From Paramoeba atlantica (taxonomy: Eukaryota > Protista > Discosea): a stretch of DNA of 64,000 bases. The stretch is taken from the NCBI GenBank assembly GCA_977017575.1, contig CDRNVI010000052.1, positions 62,001 through 126,000 on the forward strand, read 5' to 3'. A model generated the notes under the pieces. It had not been told where the DNA came from. It saw only the letters and a list, made by a program, of their open reading frames with translations, and searched no databases. Positions 23,217 through 30,460 of the stretch are shown here, piece after piece; the first letter of the stretch is position 1, and each line of letters starts with the position of its first letter. Position numbers and translations under genes: made by a program.

Positions 23217-24281
23217 ATGGGCGAGGTACCTCGACCTAGCCTAGAAGGACTTCTAGATGCGAAGGCTCCGAAATGGATTTTCGTCGGAGGCAAAGGAGGG
23301 GTTGGGAAGACAACGACAAGCTGTGCGCTCTCATGCCTCCTTGCGTGGACGCCGTTGCGCAACGAGGAAAGCAAAGAGTCGAGAAAACGGCGGGTTCTCA
23401 TTATTTCCACCGATCCCGCTCACAACTTAAGCGATGCTTTTGGGCAGCCCTTTTCAAAGACTCCCACGGCTGTCAAGGGGTTGGAAAATTTACACGCGAT
23501 TGAAATTGACCCCAGCGCACTTACGAAAGACAAGGATTACTTTGCGGATTGGCACTCCAAGGAGAACGACTCGGTGGATTCCACCCAAGGTACTTTTCGT
23601 AATCTTTTCGGGGTTCTGCAAAATGCAGCCGCGTCGTTTCCTGGAATTGATGAGGTCACTGTTTTTGCGGAGTTAATGCGAGAAGTCCAGCAGTTGAACT
23701 ACGACACAGTTGTGTTTGACACGGCGCCTACCGGACACACCCTTCGTCTATTGGCGTTGCCCCATACATTAGCCGACGCGCTAGACCGCCTGCTGGATTT
23801 GCAAGGCATGACTACATTATTAAATGCTGCTTCTCAGTTCATGGGAAATGCCACCGATATGAGCGCAGGCACTTTTACGGAAAAGGTCCAGCACTGGCGG
23901 GGGCAAATCAAGGAGATCCAACAGCGGTTCACGAACCATGAGGAGACCACATTCGTGTGTGTTTGTATTCCGGAATTTTTGTCTGTGTACGAGACAGAGC
24001 GATTGATTCAAGAATTGGCAAAGTATGACATTGCGTGTGACCACGTGGTCGTGAACCAGCTTGTGCGAAGACCAAAAAACGAGTCACCGTGTCGTATGTG
24101 CGATGCGCGGGTACGCATACAGAGTAAGTACTTGGAAGAAATTACGGAATTGTATGAAGATTTTCACATAGTGCAAATGCCGCTTATGTGTGATGAAGTT
24201 CGCGGAGTCGAGAGCTTAAGTCTTTTTGGCAAATACCTTCTCACTCCATACAACCCTGACCGTGACGGCTATCTTATGTAG
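23217..24281 (+). CDS. GET3: ArsA/GET3 (TRC40) tail-anchored protein targeting ATPase
   Basis: GGKGGVGKTT, STDPAHNLSDAF, PGIDE, DTAPTGHTLRLL, PEFLSVYETERL, CRMC. Confidence 0.95.
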   Translation: MGEVPRPSLEGLLDAKAPKWIFVGGKGGVGKTTTSCALSCLLAWTPLRNEESKESRKRRVLIISTDPAHNLSDAFGQPFSKTPTAVKGLENLHAIEIDPSALTKDKDYFADWHSKENDSVDSTQGTFRNLFGVLQNAAASFPGIDEVTVFAELMREVQQLNYDTVVFDTAPTGHTLRLLALPHTLADALDRLLDLQGMTTLLNAASQFMGNATDMSAGTFTEKVQHWRGQIKEIQQRFTNHEETTFVCVCIPEFLSVYETERLIQELAKYDIACDHVVVNQLVRRPKNESPCRMCDARVRIQSKYLEEITELYEDFHIVQMPLMCDEVRGVESLSLFGKYLLTPYNPDRDGYLM

Positions 24282-24493: not shown

Positions 24494-25063
24494 ATGCTTG
24501 GGAGTCATGGGGGGTGGCATCCCATGAGCATGGCCGACTTAGCTGGGATTCTACTACAGTATATTTTAGCATTGTTTTCTTGTGCCGTTATTTTTAAAAT
24601 GTCTTCTTTTACATTTAGTCCGCAACTAACACTGCGATCATTCAGCCGGCGCGTGTCGGCACAACGTCTTGCTGCAGAGGACGCTCCACCGATTGTTCGC
24701 CCTGGCAAAGTACGAGCGAACTTGCCCCAAGAGTACGATCTTTCCAGATTTGTTGAGCTCATTTCTAGTCCACATTCTTCTTGGAACGTTTCTTTGCCAG
24801 CGTGTGATTGGTATGGTGTTATTTGTGACAAGGCACGATACGTTACGGAGATGCAGTGGCGTAATTACAAACTTCTGGGATCACTCCGTTGGGATTTTTT
24901 ACCCAGAACGGTACTACATTTCAATGTGTGGGATAACAAGCTCAAAGGGACAATTCCATTCGACGCGATGCCACCACACCTTCGTAGTCTTCGTGTACAG
25001 TGTAACCTTTTTACAGGCCAGCCGGATTTAAGTCATTTGCTACGCAAATTGATCATACTTGAT
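24494..25063 (+). pseudogene. LRR protein gene, 5' part, interrupted by retrotransposon (likely start 24599)
   Basis: SWNVSLPACDWYGVICD cap and LRRs ending ...LSHLLRKLIILD at 25063. Confidence 0.85.
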
Positions 25064-25089
25064 AAAGATACAGTTTCTGTACCTTGTTG
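25062..25089 (+). other. Spliced-leader (mini-exon) remnant, about nt 12/14-39
   Basis: GATACAGTTTCTGTAC (25067-25082) is identical to nt 17-32 of the Trypanosoma cruzi SL; TTG falls at SL positions 37-39; not followed by a GT donor. Confidence 0.8.
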
Positions 25090-28000
25090 ATTTGTACTAA
25101 CTGTTATCCTCCCCTACTGGGGCATGGCACTTCCCCCCTCCACCTCTGCCCCCCAAGCGCAAAGCGACGTCCCTCGAGGATCTGCTGGCGCAAAATCATC
25201 GCGTAAGCACAGCTTCCACTTCACTCAGCAGCGCGCAATACCGATTAAAATCAGACACTCGACTTCCTCGCTTTGGATATACTTCTCCGATATTCACGCG
25301 GCGGCCTCCTTCCTTACTGAAAAGAAACACTTTAATACAGAAATCACAGCGGAGCTTTCCTTGGCACGCACTTTGGATACTGGAGCGAAGAGAACCGATG
25401 GTATTCTAATCGAGAAATGTACCTTACAAGAAGTGATGGACGAAGAAGCTTGTGAACACTTTGTGTTCAAAGAAACTGCGCCGCCCCACCGCATTTTTCG
25501 ACACGCCAGCTGGACCGCGGCGCACGCAGACGAAGTCCTGAATCTCAGCCAACAATACTCTTGCCCTGGCACACTCGGTAGGGCGATTAAGAAGAAACTG
25601 GCTGGTCACGATATCCCAGGATTGGCATCCTTCGACATAACCCACGTATCGCAGAGGGAACAGACGTCCGACGAAATCCCTTGGGAAAATCCCAAGATCT
25701 CGTATGATGAGCCACTCGCAATTCGCGCGCCGAGGCAACCGAATGATTCTCGAGGAACACGGTCGTTACGTACGCAGCCGTGCGCGCACCGATGCCTAAA
25801 CAAACTAACATGTCTCCATCCATGCTGTAAAGTGGGCATTGAATCCGAACCCATTCCCGACCCTGCCTCCGATCCGAACGCGCTCCAGCTCGGTGAAGCA
25901 GGTTCCATGGTTGACGCTTCGCCACATTCAACAGCGTCCAGACGACCTGAGTCCACGCGTTCGCAGCCGTGCGCACACCGATGCCTAAGCAAACGAACAT
26001 GTCTACATCCGTGCTGTAAAGTGGGCATTGAACCCGAGCCTATTACCGACCCTGCCTCCGATCTGAATGCTCGTCAGCTCGTTGAAGCGGCTCCTACTGC
26101 TCTAGTAGCAGTGCAGCAAACAGCCTCCAGACCTGGGTATACGCTCTCACAGCCCTGCGCGTATCGATGTCTAAACAAACTAACATGCCTTCACCCATGT
26201 TGCAAAATAGGCGGTGAATGTGATCCGGCCTCTCAAGCAGGCACGCACCGACCCACGGGAACGATTCAGAGTCCCCACACCGACTCGACACAACTACGAG
26301 ATGAGCCACACCAGACTATGTACAGCACAACAAGGCGGCCATGCAAGCATGTCTGTCGGGACAAACAGAATTGCAAACATGGATGTTGCAAAGTTGGCGT
26401 GCTGGTCGATAGTTCTACACCCACCGACCCCAGTAGACCTGGAATTCCACATAATGAAACCTATGTTGCCTCCACTCGTGATCTGCACGCGCAGCACATA
26501 CAGCCAACATCTGCAAGGAAAATTTCTGACACATCTACGGTACCGGAGGGGGAAGAATCCTCGCACAGACCCTGCAAACACCTGTGCCACAACAAGGAAG
26601 AATGTAAGCACAAGTGTTGTAAGGAAGGTGTCCAAAGCCCAGTTAAAGATACCCGATCGGGCTCGAGTCGCTGGAGCCTGCGCAATCTTCTTTCATGGGG
26701 CTTCACCACAGGGAGCACGCGTACCAACGAAAACACAGCCCCTGCACGCACAAGGGATGGCCATGCAACCGGATCCGCAGCGCAACGTTACCCCGAGACG
26801 CACAGGAACATGCCACAGGACCAACAGCAAGCCGAAACGACCGCACATCACACACAGGCCCGAATAGATGTGATTGAAGAAACCGAGACACAGGTGCAGG
26901 ATACAACACAGCAGGATTTACCACATCATGACACGCAACCAAATAGTATACCGAATGTACGCACGATTCTGCAATCACAACGGATGAGAACGCGCAACGA
27001 TCGTTCAGGAAGCCCAGAAACTGCGGAAGACTTGCTGAGTACCTTGCGTACGATTGAAGGAGGGCGAGTAATGGCTAGTCTTTCTCATGAGCAATGGCAA
27101 CGCGCAATCAAGAAGTCGTTCGAACGATGTGAGAAATACCTTAAACCAGCTGCAACCCCAACTGAAGTACTGCGACATGCCGATTTGTTAACTGCCTGCA
27201 TAGCAGTCTCGGCTTATGAAATCGCGCGGGAGGCTGACCCAACGAAAGGATTCAAGCTACGCTCGACGACTGGCCACACCAAACGTGCTTCACGACCTCT
27301 CAGCTACGATCGCTCAGCAAAGGAACTTTCTGGACATATCCGCCAATTAAAACGTACCCTCTCTTACACACACGGCCGCTCGGAAAGAGATCGCCTGATA
27401 CGCAACATAAAAGAAGCCACGAAAGCCCGCAACCTCTACACAGAAGAAGCAAATCTCCTGCGACGTGAAAGGGAGAAAAGATGGGTGACGGACAGATTTC
27501 AACGGAACCCCTGGACGGCAGGAGGGGAATGCCTCGACAATAACGAGAAGATGCGAAAACAGCCAACGATTTTCCCGAATTGTCCACAGGCAGTTATTGA
27601 AACGTTCTTCAAGGACACACTAAGCATTGGCAACGAAACCCACACTCTACCCCCCACTGATCTTCTTGGCGCTGGAAACGAAAGCGAAATGAAGTGGGAA
27701 GATATTGACGTGCAAACCATAGCCGCGGCTATCTCCTCCAAGCGACCGTCCGCTGCACCAGGTCCTGACACCATAAGTAACGCCTTCCTCCGACGCTGCA
27801 CTGAGCTGTACCCCTTCATCGCCCAAGTATTCAACGACCTACTCAAACACCCCGTAGGTCCAACCCACTGGAAACAAGCGGTGACTCGACTCATCCACAA
27901 AGGGGGGGCTACGGATAAACTGTCGAACTGGCGCCCTATCAGCCTGACCAGCTGTCTGGGGAAGCTACTCCACTCAATCATAGGACACAAACTTCTGAGT

Positions 28001-30076
28001 CACGCTGTCAGCACAGGGATCATCGACACGACCATACAAAAAGGCTTTCTCCCCAATGTCAATGGAACCATCGAACACACGCAAGCGCTTTGTGAACTGC
28101 TGGATTTTCAGAGGCAGCACAAACGGCAATACTGCTTGGGTCAATTCGACCTGAAAAACGCCTTTGGTTCTCTTCCACACTCGATCCTCTTCCAAGTATT
28201 ACAATGGGCAAAGGTGTCGCCGATTATCATCGAATATGTTCACTCCCTCTATACCAGTGCTTCTCTCCGAGTCAAGTGTGCTGAGGGGTTGACTAACCAC
28301 ATTCCCGTTGAACGAGGCGTTCTTCAAGGCGACACCCTATCTCCTGTGCTATTCAACCTTGCGATGGAGGTAGTTTTAAGGTACCTTCGATCCAGCTTTC
28401 CAGGATATGGCATCACATGGGGCGGGCAAGAATCATTCCTTAAGGCGTTTGCGGACGACCTTGCCGTCATTACCAAATCACCCGAAGAAATGCAGCATGT
28501 TACTAACGCCCTGGTAAAGGTGCTCGCCAGATTAGGCATGCGGCTAAATGTACAGAAATGTCGGCTTCAGTATATGGCTGTAGCGGATGGAGGATACAAA
28601 ACCCACAGACCGCGCATCCGTGCCGGCGGCGAAAGCATACCCCACGTTTGCGACAAAGGCAGTCAGTTTCTGGGCATGACGCTAGCGCCTGGAGCCCAAC
28701 AAGGGAAAGTGTTGTTCAAGAGTCTCCGTACACAACTACGCCACTGGCTTACCAACGTATCTGAAAGTGCCATGGATACGCCCGCCCGCCTCTGGGTCTA
28801 CAATAACGTCATTATTTCCCGTCTACGCTACGTTCTGACGGTAAATCCGGGAATCACACTGAATTTCATCCTGCGGCTGCAAAAGCTTGCGACTACACAC
28901 ATTCGGAAATGGGTGAATATGGCCAAAACTGCAACCAGCGAACTTCTCTATTCTGAGCGGGGGTGGGCCTTAACTAGTTTCTCAAAGCTGTGGATACTCT
29001 GCACGAGTACACTGGTCGAGCAAATGCAGAAATCACGTGACCCGGCTGTGCAACAGGCTTTAAGACACCGCATCCGCAGGGAACTGCACAAGCGCTCAAC
29101 GGGACACGTCCAACCAGTAGTTGAACTGTACGACCGACGAGAAGACCGTGTGGCGACACGGCGGTTCATTGAGAGTGAATACGAGCGACACCTTTCCGAA
29201 TCCGTGCAACGACGGGCTCCCATAGCGGCACAGTGGTTCCGTATGGCCACTGAGGACGAACTTGCGAAAGACTTTGCTGCTGCGGTATGTAACATCAACA
29301 GTGAGGCACTCTCCCGGTTTACTGCATCTGTGTTGACCCAAACACCACTACCTACTCGTTCAGCACTGCGTCGTTGGGGTCTAAGTACGCACACGGACAC
29401 AAAGTGTCCCATTTGCAAAGAGGAGGTGCAGACAGTTCGACATGTCCTCACAGGGTGCAAGGTGGCCCTTGAACAGGGCCGCTACACGTTCCGCCATGAT
29501 CTTATACTCCACGCTATCGCAGATGCCGTAAGAGCATCCCCAGAAACAGCGCAGTACCACTTTGATCTTTCTCTTTACCGAAACCCCCCAACATGGCTAA
29601 GTCAACAGGACACGGCCCTTAGACCTGATGGGTGGATCAAGCTACATAATGGTACTGAGTTCATACTTGAGCTCACTTCTCCGTGGGAGGAAAACTTTTT
29701 ATCCTCACATGAGCGGAAAGTGCGGAAGTACGGGAATCTGTTTCTCGAAAGGAAAATGACTAACCCGGCAACCTTTCTTCTTGTCATCGAAGTGGGGGCC
29801 AGAGGGAAGCTCAACTCCTCTACGCGAGCGCTCAACTCACTTTTCGGAGGTAACAAGGCCACCGCCTCGCAATGTCGACAGAAGCTTGTCAAAAGAGCAA
29901 TACGAGGAAGTTTCGCGATTTTTCAAAACCGCGATAACCCGAGCTGGACGGAAGCCAGCATATAGCGATGATGAAAAGCTTAAGGGAAACCCGTTTTGTG
30001 CGGGGTTTATGCATGATCTACGTGTATTTCTCTTAGGTGACAATCTCTGCAGTCATACTGCATGATAAACAAAATA
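25064..30076 (+). mobile_element. Full-length RLE-type non-LTR retrotransposon (R2 group, HERO/NeSL/R4-like)
   Basis: Single intact ORF, about 110-nt 3' UTR ending tgataaacaaaata; the flanks rejoin into an in-frame LRR; no clear TSD. Confidence 0.9.
25124..29965 (+). CDS. Retrotransposon ORF: 5 Cys/His zinc fingers + RT + CCHC knuckle + restriction-like endonuclease
   Basis: SAAPGPDTI, NWRPISLTS, QKGFLP, FDLKNAFGS, GVLQGDTLSPVLFNL, AFADDL, FLG; CPICKEEVQTVRHVLTGC; GRYTFRHD; RPDG..ELTSPWE..KVRKY. Confidence 0.95.
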   Translation: MALPPSTSAPQAQSDVPRGSAGAKSSRKHSFHFTQQRAIPIKIRHSTSSLWIYFSDIHAAASFLTEKKHFNTEITAELSLARTLDTGAKRTDGILIEKCTLQEVMDEEACEHFVFKETAPPHRIFRHASWTAAHADEVLNLSQQYSCPGTLGRAIKKKLAGHDIPGLASFDITHVSQREQTSDEIPWENPKISYDEPLAIRAPRQPNDSRGTRSLRTQPCAHRCLNKLTCLHPCCKVGIESEPIPDPASDPNALQLGEAGSMVDASPHSTASRRPESTRSQPCAHRCLSKRTCLHPCCKVGIEPEPITDPASDLNARQLVEAAPTALVAVQQTASRPGYTLSQPCAYRCLNKLTCLHPCCKIGGECDPASQAGTHRPTGTIQSPHTDSTQLRDEPHQTMYSTTRRPCKHVCRDKQNCKHGCCKVGVLVDSSTPTDPSRPGIPHNETYVASTRDLHAQHIQPTSARKISDTSTVPEGEESSHRPCKHLCHNKEECKHKCCKEGVQSPVKDTRSGSSRWSLRNLLSWGFTTGSTRTNENTAPARTRDGHATGSAAQRYPETHRNMPQDQQQAETTAHHTQARIDVIEETETQVQDTTQQDLPHHDTQPNSIPNVRTILQSQRMRTRNDRSGSPETAEDLLSTLRTIEGGRVMASLSHEQWQRAIKKSFERCEKYLKPAATPTEVLRHADLLTACIAVSAYEIAREADPTKGFKLRSTTGHTKRASRPLSYDRSAKELSGHIRQLKRTLSYTHGRSERDRLIRNIKEATKARNLYTEEANLLRREREKRWVTDRFQRNPWTAGGECLDNNEKMRKQPTIFPNCPQAVIETFFKDTLSIGNETHTLPPTDLLGAGNESEMKWEDIDVQTIAAAISSKRPSAAPGPDTISNAFLRRCTELYPFIAQVFNDLLKHPVGPTHWKQAVTRLIHKGGATDKLSNWRPISLTSCLGKLLHSIIGHKLLSHAVSTGIIDTTIQKGFLPNVNGTIEHTQALCELLDFQRQHKRQYCLGQFDLKNAFGSLPHSILFQVLQWAKVSPIIIEYVHSLYTSASLRVKCAEGLTNHIPVERGVLQGDTLSPVLFNLAMEVVLRYLRSSFPGYGITWGGQESFLKAFADDLAVITKSPEEMQHVTNALVKVLARLGMRLNVQKCRLQYMAVADGGYKTHRPRIRAGGESIPHVCDKGSQFLGMTLAPGAQQGKVLFKSLRTQLRHWLTNVSESAMDTPARLWVYNNVIISRLRYVLTVNPGITLNFILRLQKLATTHIRKWVNMAKTATSELLYSERGWALTSFSKLWILCTSTLVEQMQKSRDPAVQQALRHRIRRELHKRSTGHVQPVVELYDRREDRVATRRFIESEYERHLSESVQRRAPIAAQWFRMATEDELAKDFAAAVCNINSEALSRFTASVLTQTPLPTRSALRRWGLSTHTDTKCPICKEEVQTVRHVLTGCKVALEQGRYTFRHDLILHAIADAVRASPETAQYHFDLSLYRNPPTWLSQQDTALRPDGWIKLHNGTEFILELTSPWEENFLSSHERKVRKYGNLFLERKMTNPATFLLVIEVGARGKLNSSTRALNSLFGGNKATASQCRQKLVKRAIRGSFAIFQNRDNPSWTEASI

Positions 30077-30460
30077 CTACATACCAACCGATTTGATGGT
30101 ACTGTAAATATTTCTCATCTGCCACCTAACTTGCGGGATTTAGACATTCATGGCAATAATTTTTCTGGTAAGCTCGACATCACACGGTTGCCACGAAAGA
30201 TGACTTACGTAAATTTCTCGCACAATCGATTCACAGGCCCGCTTCACCTACATCAACTGCCCACATCACTTTTAGTGCTTGACGCAAAAAATAATCTATT
30301 CTCTGGGTTAGTGAAGTTTGACGGTCTTCCTGTTTCATTGCGCTCGTTAAGCCTAGAAAACAATAAGAAGCTTTCCGGTGAATTTAACAAGTCTGATCTT
30401 TCGGAGGATTATAATTTTATTAGTGTAGGTGGTACTGGGATTATAGAATTGGGTCGCTAA
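30077..30460 (+). pseudogene. LRR protein gene, 3' part (continuation of 24494-25063)
   Basis: LHTNRFDGTVNISHLPPNLRDLDIHGNNFSG...; joining 25063 to 30077 restores LIILD-LHTN (LxxLxLxxN). Confidence 0.85.

What the first reader, a model, noticed from the sequence alone, without database searches (positions are those of the whole stretch)
25778..26628. Five Mer3/HFM1-type zinc fingers as the N-terminal module of an RLE retrotransposon
Seen: five copies of C-x-(H/Y)-x-C-x2-K-x2-C-x-H-x-C-C-K-x-G (PCAHRCLNKLTCLHPCCKVG, PCAHRCLSKRTCLHPCCKVG, PCAYRCLNKLTCLHPCCKIG, PCKHVCRDKQNCKHGCCKVG, PCKHLCHNKEECKHKCCKEG), separated by 40-60-aa low-complexity linkers. Copies 1-3 are recent DNA-level duplications. 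Established: this spacing matches the C-terminal finger of the meiotic helicase Mer3/HFM1 (yeast CFHSCKDKTQCRHLCCKEG), whereas R2-group elements normally use C2H2/CCHC fingers and Myb domains. Inference: a captured, amplified finger acting as a new target-recognition or host-protein-docking module.
Basis: partly seen in the sequence, partly recalled or inferred. Interest (0 to 1): 0.8.

Follow-up and report, generated by a model that had tools for sequence, protein, structure and literature searches.

The report
Mer3/HFM1-type zinc fingers in a retrotransposon
An intact jumping gene of a kinetoplastid-like protist carries five copies of a small cysteine/histidine motif in front of its reverse transcriptase; this is the same little-studied "zinc finger" found in the meiotic helicase Mer3/HFM1, and it sits where related elements keep their DNA-binding fingers.

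Summary
Five fingers of the form C-x-H/Y-x-C-x2-K-x2-C-x-H-x-CC-K-x-G lie at residues 220, 283, 345, 407 and 484 of one 1613-aa ORF (window 25124-29965). This ORF is a single-ORF R2-type retrotransposon with RT, a CCHC knuckle and a restriction-like endonuclease.

The Mer3/HFM1 link also holds. A profile built only from the element's fingers was searched against 1.84 billion proteins. It recovered single-Sec63 DEAD-box helicases named MER3 or HFM1 in animals, yeasts and chytrids, with the finger just after the Sec63 domain.

- **Not yet described:** the module has no Pfam model and no solved structure.
- **Conserved across the superfamily:** all divergent families of this retrotransposon superfamily in the genome carry 2-5 fingers. 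The ligand positions are invariant, the linkers are free to vary, and changes between duplicated copies are mostly synonymous.
- **Absent from distant relatives:** more distant RLE relatives (25-32% identity) lack it.
- **Absent from the host helicase:** the host's own Mer3 orthologue also lacks it, so capture from the host Mer3 is not shown.
- **Function:** this is inferred, not tested. The most likely role is a multivalent zinc-dependent nucleic-acid-binding module in the slot where R2 has C2H2/Myb.

The scan already reached the same reading on other pieces of this genome (s1-403593, s1-377425).

The parts
25064..30074 (+). Whole retrotransposon copy: spliced-leader-like 5' end, one ORF, short 3' UTR ending in an A-rich tail
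   Evidence: The ends were defined by comparing six 99%-identical copies that have different flanks.
25124..29965 (+). Single 1613-aa ORF with no stops
   Evidence: five further full-length copies at 99% identity in the genome, four of them without stops
25226..25693 (+). Conserved globular N-terminal domain (about aa 35-190) of unknown fold, directly upstream of finger 1
   Evidence: Conserved across families. The AF2 model has pLDDT about 90 over residues 31-170 of the model, which starts at ORF residue 6. Only weak structural matches were found.
25778..26629 (+). Array of five Mer3/HFM1-type fingers with low-complexity linkers (aa 219-502)
25769..26226 (+). Tandem DNA duplication (units of about 189 nt) that produced fingers 1-3
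   Evidence: Between finger cores 1 and 3, six differing codons are synonymous and two are non-synonymous.
26666..26698 (+). Conserved R-W-S-L-R-N-L motif after the last finger
   Evidence: alignment of families
27896..28678 (+). Reverse transcriptase domain
   Evidence: Pfam RVT_1, E 4.9e-31; aligns to solved R2 and L1 RTs
29405..29458 (+). C-terminal CCHC knuckle (CPICKEEVQTVRHVLTGC)
   Evidence: zf-RVT
29459..29923 (+). Restriction-like endonuclease region (RPD ... ELT ... KVRKY)
   Evidence: Read directly from the sequence. RT-linker-RLE aligns end to end with solved R2 proteins 9nl3/9dou, E about 1e-31.

Best explanation
The region is the N-terminal nucleic-acid-binding arm of an intact, recently active, single-ORF R2-type (RT plus restriction-like endonuclease) non-LTR retrotransposon. 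Instead of the C2H2 fingers and Myb motif of R2-group elements, this arm is a globular domain followed by a string of small Cys/His modules on flexible linkers. Five modules are present here: one ancestral finger was triplicated in tandem, and two more follow. The module is the same one that forms the 'Zn finger' after the Sec63 domain of the meiotic helicase Mer3/HFM1. It has six invariant potential metal ligands (C, C, C, H, C, C) plus an invariant Lys. Shown: the motif, its conservation under purifying selection, its position in the ORF, its identity with the Mer3/HFM1 module, and its amplification by tandem duplication. Inferred: each module folds around zinc. Also inferred: the array binds nucleic acid multivalently with low sequence specificity, holding the element's protein on target DNA and/or its own RNA during target-primed reverse transcription.
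For: - **Motif is real and non-random:**
- **Conserved across families:** all families down to 37-50% ORF identity keep 2-5 fingers. C7, C11, K14, C17, H19, C21 and C22 are invariant, while the linkers diverge in length and sequence.
- **Purifying selection:** changes between duplicated fingers are mostly synonymous.
- **Abundance:** 483 first-look finger candidates in the genome. All top-150 loci that I opened lie in this retroelement superfamily.
- **R2-type architecture:**
- **Mer3/HFM1 link:** the profile of retrotransposon fingers recovers MER3/HFM1 helicases. hhalign of retrotransposon versus Mer3 finger profiles gives 99.2% probability.
- **Literature:** a Zn finger in Mer3/HFM1 is reported in PMC13003030 and PMC8383409 (C1157Y lies in it).
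- **Positional analogy:** the ZF/Myb N-terminal region is the DNA-binding domain of RLE LINEs (PMC5678591).
- **Other nucleic-acid contexts:** the finger occurs at the C-terminus of a different metagenomic LINE and next to CCHC knuckles (P0240, P0308).
Against: - No binding or metal data exist for this finger in any protein, and no solved structure contains it.
- The AF2 model of one finger is only moderately confident (pLDDT 72.8) and found no structural neighbour.
- The first His is replaced by Tyr in finger 3 of all six copies, so the ligand set is uncertain.
- The copies of this family sit at different, unrelated sites, so the array does not impose strict site specificity.
- For a 20-residue motif, convergence cannot be formally excluded.
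- The hhalign test is partly circular, because the Mer3 fingers were picked using the retrotransposon profile.
Confidence: 0.6

Rival explanations
1. The array is mainly an RNA-binding or nucleic-acid-chaperone module. It would act as a built-in substitute for the ORF1/Gag protein that this single-ORF element lacks, rather than as a target-DNA reader.
For: - The layout is many small fingers on long disordered linkers, and their number varies between families.
- Insertions are dispersed, without a shared target sequence.
- The same finger occurs with Gag-type CCHC knuckles in P0240 and P0308.
- It also occurs at the C-terminus of another LINE. That is the position where the L1Tc C2H2 motifs with chaperone activity sit (abstract of PMC2805920, as listed).
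Against: In R2-type proteins the N-terminal ZF/Myb region binds target DNA, while RNA is bound by the region just upstream of the RT and by the RT itself (PMC5678591). Nothing here separates DNA binding from RNA binding.
Confidence: 0.25
2. The fingers are a protein-docking module that recruits a host factor, for example a partner that also binds the Mer3/HFM1 finger at recombination or replication intermediates.
For: In Mer3/HFM1 the finger lies in the C-terminal region that also carries the RPA-binding motif (PMC13003030). The shared non-ligand residues (K14, K-x-G-V) could form a conserved surface.
Against: No partner of the Mer3 finger is known. The RPA motif is a separate segment beside the finger (PMC13003030). 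The host's Mer3 has no finger, so no host pathway visibly uses this module.
Confidence: 0.08
3. The resemblance to Mer3/HFM1 is convergent: two unrelated short Cys/His knuckles that happen to share spacing.
For: The module is only about 20 residues long, and Cys-rich profiles score easily. The host lineage's Mer3 lacks it.
Against: Agreement goes beyond the ligands: P before C1, D/N-K in the middle and K-x-G-V/I after CC are shared. Single fingers reach E 2e-6 to 8e-4 against 1.84 billion proteins, and in the helicases they fall at one constant position after the Sec63 domain.
Confidence: 0.07

Closest known systems
R2 and other R2-group RLE non-LTR retrotransposons (R2Bm, R2Tg)
   Same: Single ORF. 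RT, linker, CCHC knuckle and PD-(D/E)xK-type endonuclease align end to end with solved R2 proteins. An N-terminal arm made of zinc fingers precedes the RT.
   Different: The N-terminal fingers are not C2H2, and no Myb motif is detected. An extra globular N-terminal domain of about 155 aa is present. Insertions are dispersed, not in rDNA.
CRE-clade elements of trypanosomatids (CRE1/2, SLACS, CZAR)
   Same: Kinetoplastid hosts and RLE-type single-polyprotein architecture.
   Different: These elements insert in spliced-leader RNA genes, whereas this element is dispersed. No named SLACS/CZAR/CRE protein appeared among the RT-RLE relatives or among the finger hits that I looked up by name (the profile search itself returns no names). 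RT phylogeny against Repbase references could not be done.
Zn finger of the meiotic helicase Mer3/HFM1
   Same: Same signature, C-x-H-x-C-x-(D/N)-K-x2-C-x-H-x-C-C-K-x-G-(V/I). Found by profile search in MER3/HFM1 of animals, yeasts and chytrids.
   Different: In the helicase there is one copy (two in some yeasts), placed 40-60 aa after the Sec63 domain. Here there are five copies at the N-terminus of an RT protein. Kinetoplastid Mer3 orthologues lack it.
C-terminal C2H2 motifs of L1Tc (C2-L1Tc nucleic-acid chaperone) and Cys-rich C-termini of other LINEs
   Same: Short zinc motifs flanked by basic or disordered sequence in a LINE protein. A metagenomic LINE (L043) has two Mer3-type fingers at exactly that C-terminal position.
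   Different: Different finger type. In the window's element the fingers are N-terminal.

Membership tests
R2-group (RLE-type) non-LTR retrotransposon | Reverse transcriptase domain of the non-LTR type | tested here: met
   Pfam RVT_1, E 4.9e-31, aa 925-1185. Best PDB matches are R2 and L1 ORF2 RTs.
R2-group (RLE-type) non-LTR retrotransposon | C-terminal CCHC knuckle followed by a PD-(D/E)xK restriction-like endonuclease, with no APE domain | tested here: met
   CPICKEEVQTVRHVLTGC at aa 1428. RPD...ELT...KVRKY downstream. Alignment through the RLE of R2Tg 9dou/9nl3. No Exo_endo_phos hit.
R2-group (RLE-type) non-LTR retrotransposon | N-terminal C2H2 (CCHH) zinc finger(s) and Myb motif | tested here: not met
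   No Pfam zf-C2H2 or Myb at E<=10 on aa 1-506. Only the C-x3-C-x5-C-x3-CC fingers are present.
R2-group (RLE-type) non-LTR retrotransposon | Site-specific insertion (typical of the group, not universal) | tested here: not met
   The six near-identical copies occupy five independent sites with unrelated flanks. Two of the five sites are in paralogous LRR genes.
CRE clade (SLACS/CZAR/CRE) | Insertion in spliced-leader RNA genes | tested here: not met
   Flanks are an LRR gene and other unique DNA.
CRE clade (SLACS/CZAR/CRE) | RT groups with CRE-clade references in a phylogeny | not testable with these tools
   No Repbase or named CRE-clade sequences could be fetched. None appeared.
Mer3/HFM1-type zinc finger module | Signature C-x-H-x-C-x-(D/N)-K-x2-C-x-H-x-CC-K-x-G | tested here: met
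   All five fingers fit (His to Tyr in finger 3). The retrotransposon and Mer3 alignments give the same consensus.
Mer3/HFM1-type zinc finger module | Statistically significant profile match between retrotransposon fingers and helicase fingers | tested here: met
   The retrotransposon-only profile hits MER3/HFM1 helicases at E 2.4e-6 to 8e-4 in 1.84 billion proteins. hhalign gives 99.2% (partly circular).
Mer3/HFM1-type zinc finger module | Binds zinc | not testable with these tools
   No structure or metal data exist. No PDB chain has the motif.
Mer3/HFM1 helicase (the protein family) | DEAD/Helicase_C/wHTH/Sec63 helicase core | tested here: not met
   The ORF has no helicase domains. Only the finger module is shared.

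The most novel reading that the evidence does not exclude
The finger is a mobile eukaryotic nucleic-acid-binding module that has moved between retroelements and the meiotic crossover helicase. Either the Zn finger of opisthokont Mer3/HFM1 was acquired from a retroelement, or an ancient retroelement took it from a helicase. On this reading it recognises DNA structure (single-stranded or branched intermediates) rather than sequence. That would let this retrotransposon family integrate at recombination or replication intermediates, and it would assign a first function to the unexplained Mer3/HFM1 finger, in which infertility mutations lie.
Probability: 0.15. Interest if true: 0.8.

Novelty: new variant of a known kind. 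Interest (0 to 1): 0.55.

Why it matters
RLE-type LINEs are being developed as gene-insertion tools, and their N-terminal fingers decide where they land. A whole superfamily that uses a different, unmodelled finger type widens the known set of such targeting arms.

The retrotransposon also supplies hundreds of natural sequence variants of a module whose only well-known home is Mer3/HFM1. There its function is unknown, and human infertility variants map to it (PMC8383409). This gives a practical route to defining the module as a family and to testing what it binds.

Tried and rejected
- **Pfam** on the finger region, on single fingers and on Mer3 proteins: no family covers the finger.
- **PDB sequence searches** with the array and with the finger profile: no hits, even at E<=10.
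- **ESM Atlas feature search** of the array: no usable hit.
- **AF2 model of one finger** (pLDDT 72.8) searched with Foldseek against the PDB: no match.
- **Word-based search of 5.8 billion proteins** with the array: only one hit, a paralogous element whose family is present in this genome.
- **Host Mer3 as donor:** the host orthologue has no finger (two allelic copies, 1515 aa, on contigs C3 and C30). None of 120 related helicases has one either.
- **N-terminal domain fold:** Foldseek found nothing. VIA-align gave only Z 5-6.2 to the DNA-binding domains of I-HmuI and I-TevI, below the level the tool advises trusting.
- **Sequencing-run search:** only DNA-type holders from one study and no RNA run, so expression was not tested and read laying was not used.
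- **Literature:** no paper holds HFM1 + retrotransposon + zinc finger + reverse transcriptase.
- **Could not be done:** Repbase/Dfam could not be searched.

Full report
**Observation.** The window holds one long ORF, 25124-29965 on the + strand, 1613 aa. A pattern scan finds exactly five C-x-(H/Y)-x-C-x2-K-x2-C-x-H-x-CC-K-x-G motifs, at residues 220, 283, 345, 407 and 484 (nt 25781-26629). The linkers are 43-58 aa long and of low complexity. None of 20,000 shuffles of the ORF produced a single C-x3-C-x5-C-x3-CC match. Fingers 1-3 lie in tandem DNA units of about 189 nt, and the 77-nt cores are 91% and 79% identical to the first.

**What the ORF is.** Pfam finds RVT_1 at aa 925-1185 (E 4.9e-31) and the C-terminal zf-RVT/CCHC motif. 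The part from upstream of the RT to near the end aligns in one piece with solved R2 proteins (9nl3 and 9dou, E about 1e-31, through their endonuclease). An RPD...ELT...KVRKY arrangement follows the CCHC knuckle. No APE domain, C2H2 finger or Myb motif is detected. This is therefore an R2-type, single-ORF, restriction-like-endonuclease (RLE) non-LTR retrotransposon.

**Copies and boundaries.** The genome (45.7 Mb, 248 contigs) holds six copies at 99% identity, four of the other five without stops. It also holds many further families at 73, 59, 55, 50 and 47% identity, and one at about 39%. Comparing the six copies sets the element at about 25064-30074. It has a spliced-leader-like 5' end and a short A-rich tail, and the flanks differ between copies. 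Here it interrupts a leucine-rich-repeat gene.

**The finger across the superfamily.** Every family that I fetched carries 2-5 fingers in the same part of the ORF. In an alignment of 22 fingers, C7, C11, K14, C17, H19, C21 and C22 are invariant and P6 and H9 nearly so. The linkers differ freely in length and sequence.
- The family alignment shows a conserved globular N-terminal domain, then one finger at a fixed position. That finger is single in most families, doubled in the 73% family and tripled here. Further fingers follow, then a conserved R-W-S-L-R-N-L motif.
- Between finger cores 1 and 3 there are six synonymous and two non-synonymous codon differences, including TGC/TGT changes at the cysteines.
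- A profile search of the genome gave 483 first-look candidates. The 150 that were scored all have E < 3e-9. All those I opened, including ones in short frames, are intact or decayed members of this superfamily.

The module is thus under purifying selection and has been amplified by tandem duplication.

**Relation to Mer3/HFM1.** I built the profile from retrotransposon fingers only (A1) and ran it against 1.84 billion representative proteins with no word filter. It found 121 proteins at E <= 0.001.
- The long proteins with one match are DEAD + Helicase_C + winged-helix + single-Sec63 helicases, with the finger 40-60 residues after the Sec63 domain.
- Their source names are ATP-dependent DNA helicase MER3 (Mactra, Branchiostoma, Chamberlinius) and HFM1 (Sardina, Convolutriloba). 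Others are Pichia, Spizellomyces and Synchytrium helicases and a JGI HFM1/MER3 fragment.
- An alignment of 15 helicase fingers has the same consensus as the retrotransposon fingers, including the non-ligand D/N-K and K-x-G-V/I positions.
- hhalign gives 99.2% probability. That test is partly circular, because the helicase fingers were selected with the retrotransposon profile.

The literature recognises a Zn finger in Mer3/HFM1. It lies next to the RPA-binding motif (PMC13003030), and the infertility variant C1157Y falls in it (PMC8383409). I found no statement of its function. No Pfam model covers it in either context, and no PDB chain contains it. I could not check the exact yeast string it quoted.

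**Origin.** The host has a clear Mer3/HFM1 orthologue (two allelic copies, 1515 aa). Its closest named relatives are annotated HFM1/MER3. It has no such finger, and neither do any of the 120 best related helicases, which include trypanosomatid orthologues.
- The RT-RLE relatives at 25-32% identity from other sources have the C-terminal CCHC but no Mer3-type finger.
- The finger-bearing RT proteins in the databases belong at least partly to this same organism: P0123 matches the genome at 100%, and P0001 carries the same fingers as a family fetched from it.
- The acquisition therefore happened at the base of this superfamily. Donor and direction are unknown, and 'captured from Mer3' is not shown.

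The module is not confined to these two contexts.
- A GC-rich metagenomic LINE (L043) ends its ORF with two such fingers just before an A-rich tail.
- Two proteins combine the finger with Gag-type CCHC knuckles.
- Many short metagenomic proteins carry 2-5 fingers with no other recognisable domain.

**Mechanism.** What is shown is the position and the conservation. In RLE LINEs the N-terminal ZF/Myb region is the DNA-binding arm (PMC5678591), and here the Mer3-type array occupies that slot. Six invariant potential ligands (five Cys, one His) and an invariant Lys suggest a zinc knuckle. The first His is dispensable, since it is Tyr in finger 3 of all six copies. An AF2 model of one finger is only moderately confident and matched nothing.
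- **Main reading:** I infer a multivalent, zinc-dependent nucleic-acid-binding arm with low sequence specificity. This fits the dispersed insertions, the variable finger number, and the module's other homes on proteins that act on nucleic acids.
- **Rivals:** whether it reads target DNA or acts as a built-in RNA chaperone cannot be decided here. A protein-docking role is less likely, and convergence with Mer3 is unlikely.

**Comparison and novelty.** The element works like R2-group elements and meets their RT, CCHC and RLE features. It fails the C2H2/Myb feature and is not site-specific. It is not a spliced-leader-gene-specific CRE-type insertion, and its clade could not be placed without Repbase references. 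I found no paper linking HFM1 with retrotransposons. I rate it a new variant of a known kind: an R2-type LINE superfamily with a different, unmodelled finger type shared with Mer3/HFM1.

The same reading was already reached by this scan's follow-up agents on other pieces of the same genome (s1-403593, s1-377425). My searches reproduce it independently on this copy.

Noticed in passing
L043:927-3521 (JGI metagenome contig, 4463 bp): A different, GC-rich non-LTR retrotransposon whose RT is 27% identical to the window's. Its ORF ends with two Mer3-type fingers (…CCKRHL subtype) directly before an A-rich tail. So the same finger is used at the C-terminus of another LINE.
   Followed up: partly
L029:2678-7222 (-) = G000:C3 about 440.7-445.2 kb; allelic copy L030: The host's Mer3/HFM1 orthologue (1515 aa, DEAD + one Sec63) has a long low-complexity C-terminal half and no Zn finger. 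The trypanosomatid orthologues in the hit list lack it too.
   Followed up: yes
window 25226-25693: The conserved N-terminal domain of the element folds confidently in AF2 (pLDDT about 90). It has no clear structural relative. The best VIA-align rows (Z 5-6.2) are the DNA-binding domains of the homing endonucleases I-HmuI and I-TevI, too weak to trust.
   Followed up: partly
window 24494-25063 and 30075-30460; L002 upstream flank: Two of the five independent insertion sites of this 99% family lie in paralogous LRR genes at a similar position in the repeat region. The other three sites are unrelated. This may reflect a weak target preference or simply a large gene family.
   Followed up: partly
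P0240 and P0308 (metagenomic proteins): One Mer3-type finger near the N-terminus is combined with Gag-type CCHC zinc knuckles near the C-terminus.
   Followed up: no
G000: C15/C53, C3/C30, C65/C7: Several loci appear twice with near-identical sequence and flanks (Sec63 helicases; element copies L004/L006). The assembly seems to keep both haplotypes in places, so copy counts overstate independent insertions.
   Followed up: no
window 23217-24281: An ORF of 354 aa with a GGKGGVGKTT P-loop lies just upstream of the LRR gene. It looks like a Get3/ArsA-type ATPase by eye and was not tested.
   Followed up: no
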